From: Octopus sinensis
Taxonomy: Eukaryota
Assembly (NCBI RefSeq): GCF_006345805.1
Contig: NW_021826990.1
Location: 1 to 11,454 of the forward strand
Direction of reading: 5' to 3'
DNA length: 11,454 nt
Of the stretch, positions 1 through 11,185 are shown piece after piece. Numbering within the stretch: position 1 is the stretch's first letter; every line of letters starts with the position of its first letter. A program made the position numbers and the translations under genes. The notes below the pieces were generated by a model. It searched no databases, was not told the origin of the DNA, and was given only the letters and a program-made list of their open reading frames with translations.

Positions 1-1487
1 AAACTGTAAAGGGGGAAGCAGATAAGGTTATCCGTGGGAAGAAAAGCCTACGGAAAAGACCATGGTAACCTCGGTCAATATTGTTACATGTTACCACATT
101 TGTTTGCAAGTAGGTAACCCTGTGTTTTAAATTTTCCGGGTTCATAGGATTATGCTCAAGGTGGCTTCGTCATTCATACGTGCCATCCTTGCTACATTCA
201 CCGATCTTTTTTTGAAACATTTGCTAGACAAAACTTGCCTCTCTACTCTCACTTTCCTTTTCAAGTGATACTCGAAGAAGTTGATGAGAGATTGACCAGA
301 GAGGAAAGTGTTTGTCTCCAATCCTTTCAGACGCGTCTACCAGATACATTCTTTCGCCATAGCCACAAGGATGATGAAAATAGCTCTTCCTTCCCGTTTG
401 AAGGAAGGAGGCGTGACAATATTAACGATAGACTCGGCTGATAAACCGACTCGTCCCACACGTGACAGCAGTTGTTCGACAGAAGCCCACAAAGTTGGGA
501 ATTGTTGGACACCACACGAGATGCATGCAGAACGGTTTCGTCACTCTGACCGCACCTCGGGCAGGTCGGCCCCGTGTTTCTCGAGCCGTGTCTGTAGAGC
601 TTATCCCAAACGGGTAGCGCTTCTCGATAGCACTGCCAGGCCAGGGATCTCTGGAAGTTGTCCATGGGCCCTGGCCTGAAAGTCGTCCTGAACGGGCGGG
701 TCAGGTATTCCTCGTCGACGTCCAGGTTCGCCCCGAGCTCGTCATCGTACCTCCCCTCCACTAATCCCCTATAGAATGCTTTGGTTGTGTTGAAGTCACT
801 CAAGGTCGACCCGAGACGGCATAGTTGCTTGAGAGCAACGCGACACTCGCGGTGCCATTCGCCCTTCCTTGGCCTCCTTTTGATCCACGACTGCAGTTCG
901 GTCATGGAGACGAGTTGCGGGAAAGCGTGCCTCACAAACAGCGACCACATCTGTTCACCGTCGTCTACGTAGAGCCTGAGATGCCGCAGTCTCAGCGCGT
1001 GTCTGCGTATCATCAACCACGGCATGCCCAGTCCTACTTTTAACGGGTGTTGACAGCAAATGGATCGCCTGACCATCGGGACGCATCCTTTCCACAGGAA
1101 GTGAAAGAGAATGCGTTCTAGTTTGGTGATGGTAGGGTCGGGACAAGGCACGACGGTCAGGTGGTAGTAGATGATGGAGTTCACCACCTCCGCCCGAACT
1201 TTTAGGGACAGTTTCCTCTCGGCTCATTGCACGTTTGCGCCTTGTCGACCAGTTTCTCGATGACAAGCACCAACCTCTTGGCTAACACCTTGGCCAAAAT
1301 TTTCAAGTCTGCATTAAGCAGAGTGATGGGCCTAAAGTTATCTATTACGTCCCCCTTGTTTAGATCTTTCTTCAGCAGTGTTACAGCTCCTCGGCTCACA
1401 AACCAGGAATGCTCCCGTTTTGCTGCCAGTTGCAGCACACCACTGCCAAGACGTCTCTAAACAAGTCTGGCATACAACTGTAAAGCT
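1..1487 (-). mobile_element. L1/Tx1-clade non-LTR retrotransposon, 5'-truncated, internally deleted; 3' UTR runs off the window start
   Basis: Minus-strand translation shows the RT N-terminus (LYSCMPDLF..NWQQNGSIP / RGAVTLLKKD..NFRPITLLNADLKILAKVLAKRL), then RKLSLKVRAEVVNS, FLWKG..GLGMP and a zf-RVT CCHC knuckle (CPRC..ETVLHA/LVWC). Clearly more GC-rich than the flanks. Homology ends at ~1487 next to GATA/TA repeats. Confidence 0.92.
142..1485 (-). pseudogene. Disrupted ORF2 (RT remnant plus C-terminal zinc knuckle) of the Tx1-like LINE
   Basis: Combines track ORFs 1202-1438 and 327-1187. After two frameshifts near 500-520 the frame continues LWASVEQLLSRVG..AKECIW*TRLKG..KRKVRVERQ..TLSIIL* to a stop at 142-144. 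Internal stop at 337-339; frameshift near 1410. Confidence 0.88.
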
Positions 1488-1572: not shown

Positions 1573-1573
<1 letters not shown>

Positions 1574-1947
1574 AATTTCATGTTCAGTTAAATGAAGGAA
1601 AGAAAATGGAGAGTTAAGATGATAATAATTATTTGTTATTAAAAAATTGGTAATCTTTACTTCTTACAGCCGTTTCCATTAGTGCTCAAATAAATAAATT
1701 ACAAATTTATGCTTTAAATTTGTATTTATATGTTATGAGATAATTTCATCAGAGAAAGATTTACATTACATTAAGATATGCTCATAACATATAAATACAA
1801 ATTTAAAGCATAAATTTGTAATTTACTTATTTGAGCACTAATGGAAACAGCTGTAAGAAGTAAAGATTACCAAATTTTTAATAACAAATAATTATCATTA
1901 TCTTAACTCTCCATTTTCTTTCCTTCATTTAACTGAACAGGGAATTT
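1573..1947. repeat. Long inverted repeat: arms 1573-1739 and 1781-1947 (167 bp each), 41-bp spacer
   Basis: Manual reverse-complement alignment gives 7 mismatches and no gaps (~96% identity). Confidence 0.95.
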
Positions 1948-2068: not shown

Positions 2069-2406
2069 TATATGTATATATACATACACACACACGCATG
2101 CACACACACACACACACACACACATACACACATACATATATAGATATACATATATACACACATACATATATACATATACATATATGTACACATACATATA
2201 TACATATACATATATACACACACACAAATATATTTACATACATATACATTTAACTGCATATATTCATTCATACATACACATGCATATATGTACACACACA
2301 CATATGTGTGTGTATACATGTATATATGTATACATATATATATATATATATATACATGTATGTGTATATGTGTATACATATATGTGTGTGTATAGGAGTG
2401 TGTCGT

Positions 2407-2439
<33 letters not shown>

Positions 2440-2450
2440 CACACACATAC
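2069..2450. repeat. Compound (CA)n/(TA)n/(TG)n microsatellite
   Basis: Direct reading; source of the spurious Y/T/H/I/V/C-rich ORFs in the track. Confidence 0.97.
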
Positions 2451-2707
2451 AAATGTACTTTAAAAGAAAATAAAGAGATCTCAAGAATTTGAAACTTGAT
2501 AACTCTTGGAGTTTCATATCCATATTTATGTGTTAATAGCTATTCAGACTGGCTGAGTTGATATCCTACTCAAGATATTTAAGAACAGGATTGAATTGGA
2601 AATTATAGCACACATGTGTTAATACAGAAATAGGTTAATACAGAAAAACCTACAGCAACGGGAAAGAAATACAAAAATTCCTTAAAACGAAATTAAAATT
2701 TGAGTAT

Positions 2708-2890
2708 AGGCACTGGTGTGGCTGTATGGTGAGGAGCAAGCTTCTTAGAATACGGCCATACTATATTCACAACTACATGATTTCAGGTTCAGTTCCACTG
2801 CATGACACCTTAGGCAAGTATCTTCTACAACAGCCCTAGGCATTGCCAGTAGATCTGGTTGATGGAAACTGAAAGAAGCCTGTCATATAC
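2708..2890 (+). mobile_element. tRNA-derived SINE, 5' (head) part
   Basis: A-box-like TGGCTGTATGG (2719-2729), B-box-like GGTTCAGTTCC (2786-2796), CCTTAGGCAAGTATCTT central motif, ending GGAAACTGAAAGAAGCCTGTC before a microsatellite. Resembles octopus SINE heads from recall. Confidence 0.8.
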
Positions 2891-2913
2891 ATATCTAAAT
2901 CTAGCTATCAGTC

Positions 2914-3029
2914 TATATATATGTGTGTGTGTATATATGTGTGTATGTATATATATATATATATATATATGCACACACACACACACACATATATATATAT
3001 AGTATACAATTAGAAGAAAATATATACAA

Positions 3030-3079
<50 letters not shown>

Positions 3080-3128
3080 ATATATATATGTATATGCATA
3101 TATATATATATACACACACACACACTAT
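2914..3128. repeat. Compound (TA)n/(TG)n/(CA)n microsatellite
   Basis: Direct reading. Confidence 0.95.
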
Positions 3129-3752
3129 ATGATGGCTCTCCACTCGTGACCGAGGAAGACCATTGCTAACCTTGAGGAGCATTGTGTGCTCTGGGACTAA
3201 CTTATAATTTGCATTTGCAGCTCCGTTAGTGCCTAATGAGTCCTGCTCTGACAAGCATACACGACTGCAAACATTGCAGACCAAGCTTTTCCCATTCACT
3301 ACGCTAGCAGAATGCTTAAGTTCTTCATGCAGAATACATGCTCTCTCAAAAGTGTCGATCCCCTCTTTAACTTGCTTCCTCCATCTTTGGTGATGATAGG
3401 TATTGTTCTCCCAGTCAGTCCCCTGCATATCGCAGACCTTTAAGGAGGACTTGACACAGTCTTTAAATCACGGCCTTGGTTTCTGCCAGGGTGTCTTTCC
3501 ATTCACAAGTTCCCCATATAGCACCTGCTTAGGGATTCTGCTATCCTTCATTCTAATAAGGTGTCCAGTCCAACATAACCGGTGCCTGTGCACCATCACC
3601 TCAATACTCAAGATATTAACTGTTCACAGGACCTGGAGTTTTTAAGGTCCAACCAACATTCAGAATGTGTCTGTAACATCTTTGATGAAAGCATTCAAGG
3701 ACCCTTACATGACGTTTGTAAAGGGTCCATGTCTCACATGAGTATATAGTGT
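3129..3752 (-). mobile_element. RTE-clade (BovB-like) LINE 3' fragment: ORF C-terminus, zinc finger and short 3' UTR
   Basis: Minus strand reads YSCETWTLYKRHVRVLECFHQRCYRHILNVGW ... SIEVMVHRHRLCWTGHLIRMKDSRIPKQVLYGEL..*FKDCVKSSLK..WE..RWRKQVKEGIDTFE..CNVCSRVCLS/RAGLIRH*RSC, all RTE hallmark motifs. Stops and frameshifts present. Confidence 0.92.
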
Positions 3753-4052
3753 GTGTGTGTGTGTGTGTGTATGTGTGTAATATATATATATATATATATA
3801 TATATGACTATAAATATACACTATATACTCATGTGAGACATAGACCCTTTACATACATGGAATATATATATATATATATATATATACACACTATATATAT
3901 GTATGTATATTATTACACACACACATATATATATATATACACACATATATAGTATATATAATATATATATATATAATATATATAATATATACACATATAT
4001 AGTATATATATATATATATTAATTAGAAGAATATATATACTACATACATACA
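3753..4052. repeat. (GT)n/(TA)n microsatellite array interrupted by a 36-bp inverted copy of the RTE 5' end (3818-3853)
   Basis: Direct reading. Confidence 0.9.
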
Positions 4053-4299: not shown

Positions 4300-6566
4300 T
4301 CTTCCCTATGAAGAAGACTCAAGCCATATCCAACGTGAATTTCCTTAAAGCAAAATGGTAATGAATTTGCAAAGAGATCCACAAACAAAACTGGTCCAAC
4401 AGTCTGTGTATGTAAGACATTGATATGAAACGCAGTCAGTTTATGTCAACAGTGCACGTTGTATGCACTAAATATACCCGAGAAAGAAAGACCAGCATAC
4501 CAACAAACAAGATTCCCAGGGACAGAAAAATTCTTATGTGACGCACATCAAAAGTCTCAAACTAGTTGAATAGACAACTGGAGGATAGGAAGAAGTCTAT
4601 TTTAATACAGACACTCCTAGAAATCAAAAGCAAGATCATACTCTCTCATGGAAAGGGAAGAGCAGAGAAAATAGAGCTGTAGAAATCATAAAAACAAACC
4701 CTAAAGCTTTCTATAAACTTGAAAAAAAAACCCAGCCACAATGCAATTTAAAATAGGACCATTGTTCCAAGGAAATAACTCACTAACTGCAGACCCAGAG
4801 AGGATAAGTGAGATATTCAGTGAACAATTTAACAATGTCTTCACTTCCCCACTTGGACACATGCAAATGAAAATCCAAGCTGAATTCTTTAATATTGCAG
4901 CCCTAAAAAAGGGGGAACCAACCATCAATTACATTAACATTGAGGAGACAGGTGTAACAGTGGCCATACATGAAATGAGTTCATGCTCTGCCACTGGTCC
5001 TGATGGCTTCCCAGTTATTCTCCTAAAGTCATGTCAGCAGGCTTTAGTGAAACCACTTCAGATACTTTTCCAGTTTCCTTGCAAGTAGTAAACTTCCTAA
5101 AAAGCTAAAAGGTGGCATTATATACCCTATCCACAATGGTGGAAGCAGAGTAGAGGCCAAAAACTACAAGCCACTTTCTCTCTGACTTTACATATCAGTT
5201 AAGTCATTGAGTGAATCATCAGAAAGAAGTTAATAATGTGCCTGGAAGAAAATGACCAACTGAACAATACTCAGCATAGCTTTCATCCAGAAAGAAGCTG
5301 CCTCCCACAGCTCCTATACCACTATGAATGGGTTTTGAAACAGCTGTTTGATCATTCAGATGTCAGTGGGATATATCTTGACTTTGCAAAAGCATGTCAT
5401 AAGCTGCAAAACCTTGGCATTGCTGGTGAACTGGGAGAGTGGCTGCTTGACTTCCTTAAAGGCAGTTGCAGCCAATGGTACCCTTTCTGAGGAAGCTCAA
5501 ATCTTAAGTAGTGTCCCCCAGGGAAATGTTCTAGAGTCATTACTATTCATAATAGCTCTCTTAGACATACCAATGGTCACTTGGACAAATACTGTCACTA
5601 GTTACACCAATGATACAAAATTATGACAGGCAATAAAAAAACCAAGATGATGTTGCAAGCTTACAAGTGGAACCTGAATGCAAATTTCAAATGGGTCAGA
5701 GTAAACAACATGCAGTTTAATGCTGGAAAATTTCAAGCACTGCACTATCAACTCATAAATGTACTGCAGCCAGCATGTGCAGGACCCAAAGTCACTGCAA
5801 TTCCAGAGTCACAAGCAGTGAAAGACTTTGGGGTCAGTATGTACAAGGATGCATCATTTCATAAGCACAATACCAAGATGGCAGCAAAGTGCAGACAACT
5901 GGCAAGATGGATAATGAGGTCCTTCAAGAAAAGAGACCAAAAATCTATGTTGACCCTGTGGAGAACCTTTGTTCTCAACTGCCTGGACTACTGCTCTCAG
6001 TTATGGTCACCACATAGTGCCAAACTAACAGCAGAGCTTGAAGCAGACCAACACCACTGTACTAAAAAGGAGGCTGGAAAAACTACAACTTTACTCCTGG
6101 AGCAAAGATGCGACAGATACATAATAATCTTCATATGGAAAACTCTTGAAGGGCTAGTACCAAACTTTGACATTGAGTGTTATACAAATGCCAGAACTTG
6201 ACGCCATTGTATTGTACCAAAGGTACCATCCGCTCCATCTAAATTCAGGACCAGACGCTGCAATAGTCTAGGGTTCTAATGTTCTGCCACAAAAATTAAG
6301 AAATCAGCATAAGGTGGAAGTAGATGTCTTCAAAAAGGAACTAGACATCCTCCTCCCCACAATACCAGATGAACCTGACATGAGGTACTGACCAGGGCAG
6401 CAGCATCAAACTCTCTTATACACTAAATGATCCAGCAGCTGGGACAAAGGCACATACAGGAATGGTGATGTGAAACACCCCAGACTGAGGAAATCAGCAA
6501 AACCACAGTGGTGCTCCAGCATGACCACGGCCACATGGCTGAAACAAGTAAAAGAATAAAAGAATA
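4300..6566 (+). mobile_element. CR1/Jockey-group LINE, 5'-truncated (endonuclease absent), decayed ORF2 plus 3' UTR
   Basis: Motifs in order: NFLKAKW, IPRDRKILM, IKTNPKAFY, IGPL..QFNNVFT..GPDGFP..LLKSC, NYKP, QHSF..RSCL.QLL, IYLDFAKA, VPQGNVL, YTND (for YADD), LDYCSQLWSP, RYIIIFIWKTLEGLVPN, FKKELD..IPDEP, RAAASNSL. Ends in (AAAAGAAT)2. The 5' boundary is approximate. Confidence 0.92.
4335..6424 (+). pseudogene. Reverse transcriptase pseudogene of the CR1/Jockey-group LINE
   Basis: Track ORFs 4741-5088, 5236-5490, 5348-5626 and 5623-6201 are consecutive pieces in different frames. Catalytic YADD is mutated to YTND and the FDKVDH-like segment after LDFAKA is missing. Confidence 0.9.
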
Positions 6567-6585
6567 ATTGTTTCTGTTGCATTAA

Positions 6586-6587
6586 CC

Positions 6588-6620
<33 letters not shown>

Positions 6621-6640
6621 AACATATATGTACATATATT
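6586..6640. repeat. (TA)n(CA)n microsatellite
   Basis: Direct reading. Confidence 0.93.
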
Positions 6641-6708
6641 GAAAATGTCATTAAAATTAATATTATATCTCAAAAATTTATTAACTTTAATTATGCATAT
6701 ATATATGT

Positions 6709-6771
6709 ATGTATCCTTAAAATCCTTAAAATGTTTTAGCTCGAAGGCTGCAGCCATGCTGGGGCACCACC

Positions 6772-6772
<1 letters not shown>
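6709..6772 (-). mobile_element. Short retroposon (SINE/LINE) 3' tail fragment
   Basis: Minus strand GGTGGTGCCCCAGCATGGCTGCAGCCTTCGAGCTAAAACA followed by (TTTTAAGGA)2; similar to the LINE tail at 6508-6566. Confidence 0.7.
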
Positions 6773-6813
<41 letters not shown>

Positions 6814-6867
6814 TATATATATATACATGTATGTATGTATATCTTTTTCTTTTTAAATATATATATA
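6773..6867. repeat. (TA)n microsatellite
   Basis: Direct reading. Confidence 0.93.
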
Positions 6868-7316
6868 CTAGATGTACCCGCCATGAACTGTGGGTCACAA
6901 ACACTCGAAGATGAAAATGTCAAAGTGTGGCAGGAGGGAAAAATTCTCTTGCAAAGTTCTTCATGCAATAAAATTCTTAAATAATACAGTTCTCCTGATT
7001 AATATTTTATTTTATATAAAATAACAATTTCCCTTTAAGAAAAAAAGTACCTGCAATTCAAAAGATATCTCAAAAAAATGTAAGCATAATTCCTTTTCTT
7101 TCAGTCTACGATTCCTGATTCAAAAGTTGTATAAATGATTAAAGGAAGAAAAAAGAAAGTAAGGAAAAGGATGGACAGCAGAAGCTGAGGACGAATCTTT
7201 GAAGGGTCAACATTTTCAATTGCCTTGTTTTCTTAAAGGGGAAATGACTATTTTATTTGTAATCTTTATCTTCTTAATCAAATGGCAGGAAAACAAACTT
7301 TGAGTTTTAGTATAAT

Positions 7317-7321
<5 letters not shown>
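6868..7321 (-). mobile_element. Probable non-autonomous Helitron (454 bp)
   Basis: Minus strand starts A|TCTATATTATACTAAAA (7322|7321) and ends CTAG|T (6868|6867). An imperfect GC-rich hairpin ACCCGC..GTGGGT (6876-6895) lies a few bases before the CTAG. No TIR or TSD, which matches the Helitron TC...CTRR, A|T insertion signature. Confidence 0.7.
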
Positions 7322-7408
<87 letters not shown>

Positions 7409-7416
7409 GAGAAGAG

Positions 7417-7458
<42 letters not shown>

Positions 7459-7462
7459 GAGA
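7322..7462. repeat. (GATA)n/(GA)n microsatellite
   Basis: Direct reading. Confidence 0.96.
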
Positions 7463-7930: not shown

Positions 7931-9161
7931 CTGACATCTCATTTTATCAGATATATTTACCAAAATTACATGAAAATACCTTGAAATACTAAACAGTAAA
8001 TTTATTCAATAAAATCCCCATTGGCTTCAACCATGGCCTCCAGATGACTTTGGAATCTCCTGCAACTCTTCTGGATGGTCTCCTTGTTTAAGTTGGTGAA
8101 TGCTGCCATAATCCTTGCCTTCAGTTCATCTTTGGTGTTGCAAAGAGTTTTGTTGGTCTCTCGCTCAACAGTATCCCACACATAATAATCAAGGGGGTTG
8201 CAGTCTGGAGAGTTAGATGGCCAGATGTTAGGGGTGATGTGGTCACAGAAATTGTCTGATAGCCATGATTGGGTTCTCCTGCTTGTGTGGCATGGTGCAG
8301 AGCCCTGTTGCCAGCCATAAGGTCTTCCAGCAGCCACTCCCTTGACCCAGGGCAGCATTACCTACTCCAGGCACTTGATGTAGGCCTCCGTGTTGACTGT
8401 GAGCCGTGCAGGAAGATGAATGGAGGCATAACATTGCCATCACTAGTGATCACTCCAAGCACCATGATGTTGACTGGATGTTTAATTTTTATCACTTTCA
8501 GATCATATTTTGGGGACACAGTAAGCCAATGGTTGTTCTGTATGTTCACTATCTGATCTTGACAGAAATTTTTTCTCGTCTAAGAAAAACCAAAGCATGT
8601 TCAATTGGAAGGGATGCTTGAGTTTGTTCAAAAGCTTCATAGCACAATCTTTCTTCTTGCCCTTGATGGCTTGGGATAAAAATTGGCCCTTTCTCACCTT
8701 GTATGAAGACGACCAAATATCTTCATGCACTACCTATCTAAAACTCAGACATGCCCATTCTTCTGGAGATGAACCTGATTGACTTGGAAGGATTGTTGTC
8801 AATTATGGCCAGGATCTCATCAAAAAATTCAGGAGTCCTTTTTCTAATCAGAACGATCAGAGTTTTCCAAGCTGCCATACCTTCGTAATCACCATTAGAC
8901 TCATCCAACTCTTTCCAAATTTCTTGCACTGTCCACAAATTGACAGCCAAACACTCTGAAATGTTCGTACTGGAGCTTCCGGCATGAATGCCAAGCAGTA
9001 CAGCATGTCGTTTCCAAATTTCTGGATAAGTGAATTATATCATGGTCCTACTTTTCTCACAGATGGTGCCAAACTGACACTACAATAATGTGTAGTCGAC
9101 AAAATCAAAACCACAATGCACGAAATTATGAATATAAAATGGCAACAATTTAGCCATTACA

Positions 9162-9165
<4 letters not shown>
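7931..9165 (-). mobile_element. Tc1/mariner superfamily DD37D (maT-type) DNA transposon, decayed, 3' end apparently clipped
   Basis: Transposase pseudogene inside; no matching TIR pair found; boundaries approximate. Confidence 0.8.
8002..9043 (-). pseudogene. DD37D transposase pseudogene
   Basis: ATG at 9043. Pieces read WKRHAVLLGIHAG, IIDNNPSKSIR, WFFLDEK (1st D), KHPVNIMVLGVITSDG, WQQGSAPCH (2nd D mutated to G), NSPDCNPLDYYVW (3rd D), GDFIE*. Exactly 37 residues separate the 2nd and 3rd catalytic positions. Several frameshifts and a stop. Confidence 0.9.

Positions 9166-9212
<47 letters not shown>
9161..9212. repeat. (TG)n(TA)n microsatellite
   Basis: Direct reading. Confidence 0.95.
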
Positions 9213-9214
<2 letters not shown>

Positions 9215-9218
9215 AATA

Positions 9219-9517
9219 CATGGTGGTATCAAAGTGTTCGTGGACTAGTTCTATAGCATGCTCACAGATGACAGAATATAGTCGTGTGTGCAGTGAAAGC
9301 TTGCAGTGACGTTCATGAGGCAGTGTGCCAAGTGCCATCGCTGTGTTTACTCTGCAAGTTGTGATTTTTGTGATTTTGCAATCATATCTTGGCGTTAGGA
9401 AGGGCATCCAGCTGTAGAAACACTGCCAGATCTGACAGGCCTGGTGCAGCCTTTTGGGCTTCCCAGACCCCGGTCAAACCGTCCAACACATGCTAGCATG
9501 GAAAGCGGACGTTAAAC

Positions 9518-9548
<31 letters not shown>

Positions 9549-9665
9549 TATGCTGTAATCTTGTGATTTTGTTATGGACAGGAACAAAGAGCCAATGCGA
9601 AAGTTTGCGATAAACTTGCTACAGAGACGTTAAGCACGATTCAACAAGCTTATGCCAATGAGACA
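9219..9665 (+). mobile_element. Mariner-type transposon 5' fragment, split by a SINE-like insertion
   Basis: TA|CATGGTGGTATCAAAG TIR-like start. ATG at 9574 gives MDRNKE, then by frameshift RANAKVCDKL/ATETLSTIQQAYANE, matching the mariner N-terminal EQRxxxKFCVKLGKSATETxxMLxxAYG pattern with small deletions. Confidence 0.7.
9389..9547 (+). mobile_element. 5'-truncated SINE-like retroposon with (GAT)10 tail
   Basis: GGCGTTAGGAAGGGCATCCAGC...CCGTCCAACACATGCTAGCATGGAAAGCGGACGTTAAAC(GAT)10 interrupts the mariner leader; resembles octopus SINE 3' halves from recall. Confidence 0.8.
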
Positions 9666-9666
9666 A

Positions 9667-9838
9667 ACGCTCCTAAGTTTTTTATTCTCTCTCTGTTTAT
9701 TTCCTCGTGTTCCTTTCCGTTGAAGAGCGTAGGCTCAAAACGTAAAAGACTTTCTCACCTTTCAAAGTATTAAACTAATACACCTGTTTGTTGTTTATAT
9801 TCCTATCTTCATCTTTTATTTTTTTGTAAATTTCAACT
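9667..9838 (+). mobile_element. Short non-coding repeat with a decayed hammerhead-like layout (possible Penelope-like terminal remnant)
   Basis: Abruptly truncates the mariner fragment, contains the motif at 9713-9748 and ends at a (TA)n tract. Confidence 0.4.
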
Positions 9839-9898
9839 ATATATACATATACATACATACATATATATATATATATATTATATATATATATATATATA
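9838..9898. repeat. (TA)n/(CATA)n microsatellite
   Basis: Direct reading. Confidence 0.93.
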
Positions 9899-9928
9899 CC
9901 AGAGTAAGCACATCAATGATTCTTAAAC

Positions 9929-9972
9929 AAACTGTCTGATGAATGGGAATGTGAAACTCTGAGTAACAGTTT
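9929..9972 (+). ncRNA. Minimal type I hammerhead ribozyme motif with intact catalytic core
   Basis: AAACTGT (stem I, 9929-35), CTGATGA (9936-42), ATG-GGAA-TGT (stem II with GNRA loop), GAAA (9953-56), CTCTGA, GTA (cleavage triplet 9963-65), ACAGTTT (stem I', 9966-72, perfect 7-bp complement). The helix III region ACTC-T-GAGT is an interrupted palindrome. Confidence 0.8.
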
Positions 9973-10005
9973 TTGTGATATTTTGCTGCTTTTTAATAAA
10001 GTATT

Positions 10006-10037
10006 TATATGTATGAGTGTGTGTGTGTGTGTGTGTG
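10006..10037. repeat. (GT)n microsatellite
   Basis: Direct reading. Confidence 0.93.
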
Positions 10038-10038
10038 A

Positions 10039-10361
10039 AGGTGCGTGGTTTAGTGGTTAGGGGCATTTGGCTCATGATTGTAAGGTCATGAGTTCAATTC
10101 CCAGTGACGCATTGTGTCCTTGAGCAAGACACTTTATTTCACATTGTTCCAATCCACTCAGCTGGCAAAAATTAGTAGTACCTGTATTTCAAAGGACCAA
10201 CCTTGTCACACTCTGTGTCACGCTGAATCTCCATGAGAGCTATGTTAGGGGTACGCGTGTCTGTGGATTGGTCAGTCAATTGCACATTAATTTCAAGAGC
10301 AGGCTGTTCCGTTGATCGTATCACCTGGGACCCTCATCGTCGTAACTGATGAAGTGCTACA
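10039..10361 (+). mobile_element. Near full-length tRNA-derived SINE
   Basis: A box TGGTTTAGTGG (10046-10056), B box GAGTTCAATTCC (10090-10101), and central TGTGTCCTTGAGCAAGACACTT motif typical of conserved-domain SINEs. Ends at a TA tract. Confidence 0.85.
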
Positions 10362-10480
10362 ATATATATATATACACACACCAATATATATTCAGAGAGA
10401 GAGAGATTTAGGAGTGCAATTATGTGGATAAGCAAATTAGATATATTAAATATAACAGTTTGGGCATGAAATATAAAATG

Positions 10481-10685
10481 TGCATAATACTATAGTACAT
10501 TTTATGAACTATTGCAGGTATAGACGACTAGCTCATCAGATCAACAGAATATCATAGTTTCATCAACTTTTCAACTTCCGTGGTTACTTCAATTGAAAAA
10601 ATGATTTAACTATGATATTCTGTTGATCTGAGGAGCTAGCCTTCTATACCTGCACTAGTTAGAAAATGTACAATAGTACTATGCA
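10481..10685. repeat. Inverted repeat: arms 10481-10559 and 10608-10685
   Basis: 7 mismatches + 1 gap over ~79 bp (~90%). Weaker complementarity continues inward and outward (10439-10486 vs 10721-10770). Confidence 0.9.
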
Positions 10686-10936
10686 TGTTTATAATATATT
10701 GAATCTCTTTGCAACTTTGATATGCAAAAATGTGTATAACTCTCAATGCCAAAAAACTGTTATTGTATCTTTTCGTAAACTGTCCACTTTTTGTTCTCTT
10801 TACTGGCCACTTACAGCTTGACGCTTACAAACTTCCGACACTTGGATCCCTATATCATATTTATACAGTGGTATATATATATATATATATATAATACACA
10901 CATATACGTTATTAATAAAGCTGCAGTGACATCAGA

Positions 10937-10982
10937 AAAACTGTTACTCAGAGTTTCATGTTCCTAATTGTCAGACAGTTTT
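10937..10982 (-). ncRNA. Degenerate copy of the same hammerhead motif (core CTGACAA, probably inactive)
   Basis: Minus strand AAAACTGT-CTGACAA-TTAGGAACAT-GAAAC-TCTGA-GTA-ACAGTTTT; 8-bp stem I intact, G8 mutated to A, stem II disrupted. Confidence 0.65.
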
Positions 10983-10983
10983 G

Positions 10984-11129
10984 GTTGTCCTACGAATGGG
11001 AACGTGAAACTCTGAGTAATAGTTTTTGTGATGCCTTTGCAGGTTTATTAATGAAGCATAGTACTCTACTTCTGGTATTTGAGTACCACTTTTTCCACCT
11101 TGCTTCATATTTATGTGCTTACTCTGGTA
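10984..11129 (+). mobile_element. Third copy of the hammerhead-bearing short element, with its 3' end
   Basis: CCTACGA-ATGGGAACGT-GAAAC-TCTGA-GTA-ATAGTTT (core has 2 substitutions). Downstream GTTTTTGTGATGCCTTTGCAGGTTTATTAATGAAGCAT aligns with 9969-10003. Ends ATGTGCTTACTCTGGTA at a microsatellite. Confidence 0.7.
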
Positions 11130-11185
11130 TGTATGTATATATATTTACACATACATATATGTCTGTATATCTGTGTGTGTGTGTG

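What the first reader, a model, noticed from the sequence alone, without database searches (positions are those of the whole stretch)
9929..9972. Intact minimal type I hammerhead ribozyme in a short non-coding mobile element
Seen: all conserved core nucleotides (C3-A9 CUGAUGA, G12-A14 GAA, A15.1-U16.1, cleavage triplet GUA), a perfect 7-bp stem I and a GGAA-capped stem II. Comparing the three copies (ATG-GGAA-TGT, ATG-GGAA-CGT, TTA-GGAA-CAT) points to an ancestral ACG-GGAA-CGT eroded by CpG decay. Helix III (ACUC-U-GAGU) can barely close alone but is self-complementary. Known: metazoan Penelope-like elements and retrozymes carry minimal type I hammerheads with palindromic helix III that cleave as dimers. 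Inference: a ribozyme-processed, possibly circRNA-forming, non-autonomous retroelement family in this genome; whether it is already described needs a search.
Basis: partly seen in the sequence, partly recalled or inferred. Interest (0 to 1): 0.85.

Follow-up and report, generated by a model that had tools for sequence, protein, structure and literature searches.

The report
Relic hammerhead ribozyme in octopus retroelement
A sequence-complete but structurally weak hammerhead ribozyme motif sits in one of three decayed copies of a short repeat that looks like the tail end of a Penelope-like retrotransposon in an octopus-type genome, which is the usual home of such minimal ribozymes.

Summary
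The motif is real. Window 9929-9972 (+) carries every invariant hammerhead core base, a perfect 7-bp stem I, a 3-bp GGAA-capped stem II (one A-U, two G-U) and a palindromic helix III. None of 3000 shuffles gave a motif as good. No Rfam hammerhead model matches it, and as a monomer it does not fold as a hammerhead; only a two-copy double hammerhead is predicted.

It belongs to an ~80-nt repeat with three copies: A 9929-10008 (+), B 10981-10899 (-) and C 10985-11060 (+). B and C have dead cores.

The anatomy fits Penelope-like element (PLE) insertions:
- head-to-head inverted copies;
- (TA)n at the outer edges;
- the ribozyme ~60-100 nt from the 3' terminus;
- an AATAAA hexamer;
- a shared terminal piece, CCAGAGTAAGCACAT, found only beside these copies.

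The host is an Octopus-like genome, where PLEs are abundant. There is no tandem array, no RT/GIY-YIG ORF in the window, and no excess conservation of the ribozyme. Retrozyme or circRNA behaviour is therefore unsupported, and these copies look like relics.

No further copies could be reached with these tools. Whether the source element is autonomous, and why every copy starts at stem I, stays open. It is a new member of a known kind; interest is low to moderate.

The parts
9838..9898 (.). (TA)n/(TACA)n microsatellite abutting the left edge of locus A. Probable insertion target.
   Evidence: Read directly. (TA)n is the reported preferred target of several PLE clades (PMC8557442).
9899..9928 (-). 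Inverted terminal fragment. 9899-9913, CCAGAGTAAGCACAT, is the exact reverse complement of 11113-11127. The match extends with mismatches into the TA-rich flank (9879-9917 versus 11109-11147). Read as a tiny inverted copy of the element's 3' terminus ('tail').
   Evidence: two exact matches on opposite strands. pair I5: 39 nt, 90% complementary; local alignment; absent from 82 kb of other octopod DNA.
9929..9972 (+). Hammerhead copy A with a complete core. Stem I 9929-9935 / 9966-9972; CUGAUGA 9936-9942; stem II plus GGAA loop 9943-9952; GAA 9953-9955; palindromic helix III 9956-9964; H17 = A9965 (cleavage site 9965|9966).
9973..10008 (+). 3' region of copy A, shared with B and C, including an AATAAA hexamer at 9995-10000. 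It runs into (TG)n at 10016-10037.
10855..10871 (+). Short possible terminus-like fragment, TCATATTTATACAGTGG, followed by (TA)11 at 10872-10893, just outside copy B. Only the first 10 nt (TCATATTTAT) align exactly with 11105-11114; the rest was matched by eye.
   Evidence: Weak evidence.
10899..10981 (-). Copy B, with the hammerhead-homologous part at 10938-10981. The core reads CUGACAA (G8A) and stem II is broken (UUA/CAU). An AATAAC hexamer lies at 10908-10913.
10985..11060 (+). Copy C, head-to-head with B (the axis is near 10982-10984). The core reads CCUACGA (U4C, G5U) and the 5' strand of stem I is truncated. The site equivalent to H17 is A11018. An AATGAA hexamer lies at 11050-11055.
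   Evidence: pair I1: 75-nt arms, 80% complementary, 8 nt apart.
11061..11104 (+). Spacer specific to copy C, between the shared 3' region and the terminal piece. It contains a small inverted repeat (GTACTC...GAGTAC). Origin unknown.
11105..11127 (+). Terminal piece TCATATTTATGTGCTTACTCTGG, abutting a TA/TG-rich microsatellite at 11128-11170. It is the partner of 9899-9917.

Best explanation
The motif is a genuine minimal, dimer-type hammerhead ribozyme inherited by an ~80-115-nt repeat. That repeat is the 3'-terminal (pseudo-LTR-type) part of a Penelope-like retroelement, or of a short derivative moved by the same machinery, in an Octopus-like genome.

In an active source element (inferred from what is known of the family), a transcript carrying two such ribozymes pairs them through the palindromic ACUCUGAGU. 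This forms a double hammerhead in which the core of one copy cuts after the GUA of the other. That trims a longer-than-unit transcript. Reverse transcription then starts a short way downstream of the ribozyme, and integration goes into (TA)n, often as head-to-head pairs.

What the window holds (shown) are relics of two such insertion events:
- Locus A is a tiny inverted terminal fragment plus a sense copy.
- Locus B/C is two sense-start-to-sense-start copies.

B and C have lost invariant core bases. A keeps the core but has lost stem II strength to CpG decay, and it has no intact partner nearby. Self-cleavage at 9965 in this locus is therefore unlikely today.
For: Shown:
- Complete core and helices at 9929-9972; 0 of 3000 shuffles as good.
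- Three homologous copies, with the CpG-decay signature TG/CA/CG at two sites. This places a better ribozyme (CUGACGA core, G-C closing pair in stem II) in their common ancestor.
- The predicted dimer MFE has an intermolecular helix III and swapped stem I, which is the double hammerhead. For the version with the CpGs restored, the full double hammerhead is itself the MFE at -21.1 kcal/mol.
- B and C form a 75-nt-arm inverted pair.
- Both loci abut (TA)n.
- The ribozyme lies about 60 nt (copy A) to 100 nt (copy C) from the terminus, and an AATAAA-type hexamer is conserved in all copies.
- The 15-nt terminal piece occurs only beside these copies.
- The host is Octopus-like.

From the literature:
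- Minimal type I hammerheads with a short palindromic helix III lie in PLE pseudo-LTRs. They act as dimers with low activity and also occur as opposite-strand pairs 100-700 bp apart (PMC4209133).
- PLE insertions are heavily 5'-truncated. They often carry an adjacent inverted 5'-truncated copy and a 30-40-bp 'tail' at either end, and they prefer (TA)n (PMC8557442).
- PLE reverse transcription starts internally, shortly downstream of the ribozyme (PMC11167929).
- O. vulgaris has 31 recently active PLE families (PMC13282606).
Against: - No RT or GIY-YIG coding remnant lies anywhere in the window; the RT remnants present are LINE-type.
- No full-length element carrying this ribozyme could be retrieved, so the link to PLEs rests on anatomy, not homology.
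- The helix proportions differ from the published PLE consensus. That consensus has helix II of 6-8 bp, helix I of 4-5 bp, a bulged base after A9 and G10.1-C11.1. Here helix I is 7 bp, helix II is 3 bp and 10.1-11.1 is A-U.
- All sense copies begin within about 5 nt of the first base of stem I, which random 5' truncation does not predict.
- No Rfam hammerhead model matches.
- No extra copies were found in 102 kb of octopod sequence.
- Cleavage is untested.
Confidence: 0.65

Rival explanations
1. This is a dedicated short (~80-115 nt) non-autonomous element whose RNA begins at the ribozyme itself. It would be a 'solo pseudo-LTR' or mini-retrozyme copied in trans by PLE enzymes, rather than truncated pieces of a long coding element. 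This is.
For: - Homology among all three copies starts within about 5 nt of stem I. Two independent insertion events are involved (locus A and locus B/C).
- No coding remnants are adjacent.
- Animal non-LTR retrozymes have been shown to derive from PLE pseudo-LTRs (bioRxiv 10.64898/2026.07.22.740005).
Against: - With only two events, a preferred template-switch point at the base of stem I would give the same picture.
- There are no tandem direct repeats and no promoter evidence.
- No further copies were seen in 102 kb of octopod DNA.
- There is no sign of circular-RNA junctions, which cannot be tested here.
Confidence: 0.2
2. 9899-11127 is one composite DNA-transposon or foldback element of the MITE type. 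It would have terminal inverted repeats CCAGAGTAAGCACAT and TA target-site duplications, with the hammerhead-like repeat simply part of its subterminal repeats.
For: - The 15-nt inverted termini are exact, and each is flanked by TA (pair I5).
- Copy A is 86% complementary to copy B (pair I3), as subterminal inverted repeats would be.
- Tc1/mariner remnants exist in the window.
Against: - The interior is unrelated nested repeats: a SINE at 10034-10374, microsatellites and another palindrome.
- The arms are not mirrored. Reading inward from the right terminus there are 44 nt of spacer and the antisense copy C before copy B.
- A possible terminus-like fragment sits in direct, not inverted, orientation at 10855-10871 (weak).
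- This model leaves unexplained why a complete 11-base ribozyme core, a palindromic helix III and an AATAAA hexamer sit in a transposon arm.
Confidence: 0.08
3. The hammerhead match is a chance resemblance inside an unrelated repeat and was never a ribozyme.
For: - Only one of three copies has the core.
- No Rfam model matches.
- The monomer fold is no better than shuffles.
- In a genome of roughly 2-3 Gb a relaxed descriptor would give thousands of chance hits, scaling from 0.014 per 11.4 kb.
Against: - 0 of 3000 shuffles match the observed quality, and there are 0 hits in 82 kb of real octopod DNA.
- The differences in B and C are mostly transitions away from a still better ancestral ribozyme, two of them at CpG sites.
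- The context (inverted pairs, (TA)n, a near-terminal position) is the known context of such ribozymes.
Confidence: 0.05

Closest known systems
Minimal type I hammerheads of Penelope-like elements (Cervera & de la Pena 2014, PMC4209133; Lunse et al. 2017, cited in PMC6765202 but not held in the library)
   Same: - Type I topology with no loop-loop tertiary contacts.
- A very short palindromic helix III that only becomes stable in a dimer.
- Many decayed solo copies, and pairs on opposite strands.
- Association with heavily 5'-truncated, inverted insertions in microsatellites.
- A position near the 3' end of the unit.
   Different: - Helix proportions are reversed: helix I is 7 bp and helix II 3 bp here, against about 4-5 and 6-8 bp.
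- There is no bulged base between A9 and 10.1.
- 10.1-11.1 is A-U rather than G-C.
- No linked RT/GIY-YIG ORF was found in this window.
Metazoan non-LTR retrozymes (Cervera & de la Pena 2020, PMC7229834; Li et al. 2026 preprint, 10.64898/2026.07.22.740005)
   Same: - Non-coding, hammerhead-bearing and AT-rich.
- Thought to derive from PLE pseudo-LTRs and to be mobilised by PLEs.
   Different: - Retrozymes are head-to-tail tandem arrays of 150-450-bp units with canonical hammerheads (loop 1-loop 2 contacts), and they yield circRNAs.
- Here there is no tandem array, no loops for tertiary contacts, and a unit of only about 80-115 nt.
Dimer-dependent satellite hammerheads of newts and salamanders, and the double hammerhead of Forster et al. 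1988 (as described in PMC7229834 and PMC6765202)
   Same: A weak, palindromic helix III. Activity is expected only when two copies pair, with each core cutting the other copy's site.
   Different: Those sit in 330-350-bp tandem satellite units and keep the loop-loop contacts. This one is dispersed and minimal.
Schistosoma Sm-alpha / Sj-alpha SINE-like elements with hammerheads (as described in PMC6765202)
   Same: A short, dispersed, non-coding retroposon-like unit that carries a hammerhead.
   Different: Sm-alpha has a promoter ahead of a canonical, active hammerhead. By eye, no pol III A/B boxes lie in the 80-nt unit here, and the ribozyme is minimal.

Membership tests
Hammerhead ribozyme (type I) | Invariant core: C3 U4 G5 A6 N7 G8 A9, G12 A13 A14, A15.1-U16.1, and H17 not G | tested here: met
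   Copy A only. B has G8A; C has U4C and G5U.
Hammerhead ribozyme (type I) | Three helices around the core that can form in one molecule | tested here: inconclusive
   Stem I has 7 Watson-Crick pairs. Stem II has 3 pairs, two of them G-U, and is predicted to be destabilising. Helix III as 4 bp with a 1-nt loop is impossible. The hammerhead conformation scores +0.3 to +0.5 kcal/mol against an MFE of -4.1.
Hammerhead ribozyme (type I) | Match to the curated covariance models (Rfam hammerhead families) | tested here: not met
   No hammerhead hit at the gathering score, at E<=10 on the whole window, or at E<=10 on 9900-10000.
Hammerhead ribozyme (type I) | Mg2+-dependent self-cleavage 3' of H17, giving 2',3'-cyclic phosphate and 5'-OH ends | not testable with these tools
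   Needs in vitro transcription or end-specific RNA sequencing.
PLE-type minimal hammerhead | Short palindromic helix III that gives a stable double hammerhead with a second copy | tested here: met
   The dimer MFE of -15.3 kcal/mol has an intermolecular ACUCUGAGU duplex and swapped stem I. For the CpG-restored version, the full double hammerhead is the MFE at -21.1.
PLE-type minimal hammerhead | Sits in the pseudo-LTR of an element that encodes a telomerase-like RT plus a GIY-YIG endonuclease | tested here: inconclusive
   No such ORF remnant in the 11.4-kb window. The source genome could not be searched, and no related copies were found in 102 kb of octopod loci.
PLE-type minimal hammerhead | Published consensus details: a bulged base after A9, G10.1-C11.1, long helix II and short helix I (PMC4209133) | tested here: not met
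   There is no bulge, 10.1-11.1 is A-U, helix II is 3 bp and helix I is 7 bp.
PLE-type insertion anatomy | 5'-truncated copies, an adjacent inverted copy, an optional terminal 'tail', and a (TA)n target (PMC8557442) | tested here: met
   B and C are an inverted pair with 75-nt arms. An inverted terminal fragment lies at 9899-9917. (TA)n lies at all outer edges.
Non-LTR retrozyme | Head-to-tail tandem repeats of 150-450 bp, each with a hammerhead | tested here: not met
   The only direct pair, A and C, is 1053 nt apart and shares 47-80 nt. The DNA between them is a SINE, microsatellites and a palindrome.
Non-LTR retrozyme | Canonical type I hammerhead with loop 1-loop 2 tertiary contacts (PMC7229834) | tested here: not met
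   Stem I is an uninterrupted 7-bp helix with no loop or bulge, and loop 2 is a plain GGAA tetraloop.
Non-LTR retrozyme | Expression as small circular RNAs | not testable with these tools
   No transcriptome data are available here.
Tc1/mariner-type MITE | Terminal inverted repeats flanked by a TA duplication, with the arms mirrored | tested here: inconclusive
   Exact 15-nt inverted termini with TA on both sides at 9899 and 11127. However, the interior is not mirrored and is made of nested unrelated repeats.

The most novel reading that the evidence does not exclude
The unit is a free-standing mini-element of about 80-115 nt whose RNA starts exactly at the first base of the ribozyme. It would carry a ribozyme, a short 3' recognition region and nothing else, be copied in trans by Penelope-like enzymes, and be inserted as head-to-head pairs. 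That would make it the smallest hammerhead-bearing retroposon described, and would imply that the ribozyme fold itself marks the 5' end of the template.
Probability: 0.15. Interest if true: 0.55.

Novelty: new member of a known kind. Interest (0 to 1): 0.25.

Why it matters
Minimal hammerheads in Penelope-like elements are already known to be widespread in animals, so this mainly adds a cephalopod example with unusual helix proportions. The held literature has no description of hammerheads in octopus genomes.

Two points could repay a genome-wide follow-up:
- Every copy starts at the first base of stem I. This may say something about how PLE reverse transcription ends or switches template.
- In the dimer geometry, a copy with an intact core cuts its partner's site rather than its own. 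This changes what 'intact copy' means when such motifs are counted in genomes.

Tried and rejected
- Rfam at the gathering score, at E<=10 on the whole window and at E<=10 on a 101-nt stretch gave no hammerhead family. The many sub-threshold 'miRNA' hits lie on microsatellites and are artefacts.
- Exact-pattern scans of viral, metagenome and prokaryote-genome contigs gave nothing or chance hits. GGAANNNGAAACTCTGAGTAA found nothing in viral contigs. GAAACTCTGAGTAANAGTTTTT found four hits in the metagenome and genome contigs, three of them the same stretch, and none has a hammerhead arrangement.
- To reach the host genome I pulled 20-kb loci around relatives of window-encoded transposon proteins. 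These came from Argonauta hians, O. vulgaris, O. bimaculoides and an unnamed ENA assembly. An nhmmer profile of the three copies found no further members in 102 kb.
- Exact-protein look-ups of three window ORFs, meant to extend the window, were not on record.
- I translated the open frames of the repeat and searched the protein collections for spurious ORFs called over other copies. The word-indexed search returned nothing. The exhaustive search returned two proteins that do not match the ribozyme-encoded part of the query; one is a tandem-repeat ORF. I judged both unrelated.
- A literal search of paper texts for the motif sequence found nothing. The supplement of the O. vulgaris repeat paper holds no consensus library. 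Lunse et al. 2017 is not held.
- Rejected idea: a snap-back of the cDNA at stem I as the origin of the B/C palindrome. That would leave one ribozyme core in the loop, not two complete cores.

Full report
**1. The observation**

Window 9929-9972 (+) reads AAACTGT CTGATGA ATG-GGAA-TGT GAA ACTC-T-GAGT A ACAGTTT. In hammerhead numbering, every invariant base is present: C3 U4 G5 A6 (U7) G8 A9, G12 A13 A14, A15.1, U16.1 and H17=A. Stem I is seven Watson-Crick pairs. Stem II is A-U, U-G and G-U closed by a GGAA tetraloop. Helix III is the palindrome ACUCUGAGU. Cleavage would fall after 9965.

A descriptor scan of my own found this motif and no other on either strand, and none in 82 kb of real octopod DNA. 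The descriptor was CUGANGA, a helix II hairpin, GAA, A...U, non-G, and stem I. Among 3000 dinucleotide-preserving shuffles of the window, 36 had a hit to the relaxed descriptor. Three had I>=5, II>=3, III>=2. None was as good as the observed motif. The motif is therefore there, at the stated coordinates, and is not a window-level chance event.

**2. How good a ribozyme it is**

No Rfam hammerhead family matches it at the gathering score, at E<=10 over the window, or at E<=10 over 101 nt. The monomer MFE is -4.1 kcal/mol, no better than shuffles (z = +0.41), and is not the hammerhead fold. The hammerhead conformation itself scores +0.3 to +0.5 kcal/mol.

Two copies together are predicted to pair through ACUCUGAGU and to swap stem I strands. 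That is the classical double hammerhead (dimer MFE -15.3 kcal/mol). In copy A, stem II still does not form in the MFE. With the CpGs restored, the complete double hammerhead is the MFE at -21.1. There is no loop or bulge in stem I for the tertiary contact that fast natural hammerheads use. This is a minimal, dimer-dependent and probably slow hammerhead.

**3. The repeat it belongs to**

Three homologous copies exist:
- A, 9929-10008 (+)
- B, 10981-10899 (-)
- C, about 10985-11060 (+)

Homology starts within about 5 nt of the first base of stem I in all three. It runs about 80 nt, through TTGTGATG..TGCAGCTTTATTAATAAAG(C/T)AT, which contains an AATAAA-type hexamer.

The cores read CUGAUGA in A, CUGACAA in B (G8A) and CCUACGA in C (U4C, G5U). 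Only A is complete.

Two dinucleotide sites show the three-state pattern TG / CA / CG: core positions 7-8, and positions 11.3-11.2 of stem II. That pattern is the signature of CpG decay. It points to an ancestor with CUGACGA (position 7 is free in hammerheads) and a G-C closing pair in stem II.

Eight of the ten variable ribozyme columns are transitions. The ribozyme columns are no more conserved than the 3' region (31/41 versus 22/33 invariant, Fisher p = 0.44). These genomic copies have therefore drifted neutrally. With three copies no covariation test is meaningful.

**4. Arrangement**

B and C lie head to head: 75-nt arms, 80% complementary, 8 nt apart. As RNA, this pair would fold into a -84 kcal/mol hairpin that buries both motifs.

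Copy A is preceded by 9899-9928. Its first 15 nt, CCAGAGTAAGCACAT, are the exact reverse complement of 11113-11127, which lies at the far end of copy C's 3' extension. The match continues, with mismatches, into the TA-rich flank (pair I5).

This piece is absent from 82 kb of other octopod DNA, so it appears to belong to the element. Both loci therefore look like an inverted fragment joined to a sense copy. All outer edges abut TA-rich microsatellites.

The DNA between A and B is a SINE (10034-10374), microsatellites and an unrelated palindrome. There is no tandem array.

**5. Host and coding context**

A window RT remnant is most similar to proteins that include one from Argonauta hians. The mariner remnant is 84% identical in DNA to a copy on an O. 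vulgaris chromosome and 83% to one in O. bimaculoides. The window's SINEs recur many times in the O. vulgaris locus. The window is therefore from an Octopus-like octopod.

The RT remnants in the window are LINE-type (RVT_1 and zf-RVT hits). No stop-to-stop fragment near the ribozyme copies hits an RT or GIY-YIG domain.

**6. Interpretation**

Established descriptions of Penelope-like elements (PLEs) match the anatomy point by point:
- Minimal type I hammerheads with a short palindromic helix III sit in the pseudo-LTRs. They work as dimers with low activity. They are mostly found as solo motifs or as opposite-strand pairs (PMC4209133; PMC6765202).
- Insertions are heavily 5'-truncated. They often have an inverted 5'-truncated copy attached and an optional 30-40-bp tail at either end, and they favour (TA)n (PMC8557442).
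- Reverse transcription starts internally, a short way downstream of the ribozyme, which explains why the ribozyme lies near the 3' end of copies (PMC11167929).
- Octopus genomes carry many PLE families, some recently active (PMC13282606).

I therefore read the three copies as relics of two PLE-type insertion events, and the ribozyme as the element's own processing ribozyme. The link is by anatomy. I could not show homology to a coding PLE.

**7. What does not fit, and the rivals**

The helix proportions are the reverse of the published PLE consensus: long stem I and short stem II here. The A9/10.1 bulge and the G10.1-C11.1 pair are also missing.

All copies start at stem I. Random truncation does not predict that. 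The defining retrozyme features, tandem arrays and canonical loops, were tested and are not met.

The exact inverted termini with flanking TA also allow a MITE or foldback reading of 9899-11127 (about 0.08). However, the arms are not mirrored and the interior is nested junk. Pure chance is unlikely (about 0.05).

**8. A mechanistic point**

In the double hammerhead, the core of one copy cuts the other copy's site. Copy A's intact core could in principle cut after 11018 in copy C on a shared transcript. The composite A-core/C-site structure scores -8.6 kcal/mol, although the predicted A&C MFE of -16.0 is a different fold. Cleavage after 9965 would need an intact partner, which this window lacks.

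**9. Limits**

The tools hold no searchable copy of the host genome. DNA pattern scans of the available collections, protein-route tricks and 102 kb of fetched octopod loci gave no further family members. Copy number, 5'-end distribution, covariation and linkage to an RT/GIY-YIG ORF all remain to be done on the assembly itself.

**10. Verdict**

This is a new member of a known kind: a PLE-type minimal hammerhead in a cephalopod. The copies present here are probably inactive. Interest is low to moderate.

Noticed in passing
window 1573-1739 and 1781-1947: Two 167-nt arms, 96% complementary, separated by 41 nt, next to a (TA)n tract at 1527-1572. This looks like a young foldback or MITE-like palindrome.
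   Followed up: no
window 10476-10690: A palindromic unit of about 215 nt. The inner arms are 10507-10574 / 10593-10660 (88% complementary) and the outer arms 10476-10503 / 10663-10690. It lies between hammerhead copies A and B and is probably another MITE-like element.
   Followed up: no
window 9389-9552 and 10034-10374: SINE-like repeats. The second has a tRNA-like head (GGTGCGTGGTTTAGTGGTTAGG...GAGTTCAATTCCC), but ARAGORN calls no tRNA. Both recur many times in a 20-kb O. vulgaris locus (L006) and not in the O. bimaculoides, Argonauta or ENA loci.
   Followed up: partly
window 7931-9161 (-): A decayed mariner/DDE_3-type transposase remnant, 84% identical in DNA to a copy on O. vulgaris OX597814.1 and 83% to one in O. 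bimaculoides. This was used to place the host.
   Followed up: partly
window 191-1470 (-) and 4741-6201 (+): Two frameshifted LINE-type reverse transcriptase remnants. The first gives weak RVT_1 and zf-RVT hits. The second has LINE-like RT motifs by eye but no Pfam hit. Neither looks Penelope-like.
   Followed up: partly
window 2070-3130, 3720-4050, 6570-6840, 9150-9230: All strong sub-threshold Rfam 'microRNA' hits (mir-297, mir-466, mir-3149 and others) fall on TA/TG/CA microsatellites and are composition artefacts.
   Followed up: yes
window 10898-11062: A transcript across the head-to-head B/C pair would form a near-perfect ~75-bp hairpin (-84 kcal/mol). This is a potential double-stranded RNA substrate (small-RNA or A-to-I editing pathways) rather than a ribozyme.
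   Followed up: partly
window 9929, 10981-10982, about 10985: All three sense copies begin within about 5 nt of the first base of stem I. This is unexplained by random 5' truncation, and could reflect a template-switch point or a defined RNA 5' end.
   Followed up: partly
window 7315-7460: A long compound (GATA)n/(GA)n microsatellite.
   Followed up: no
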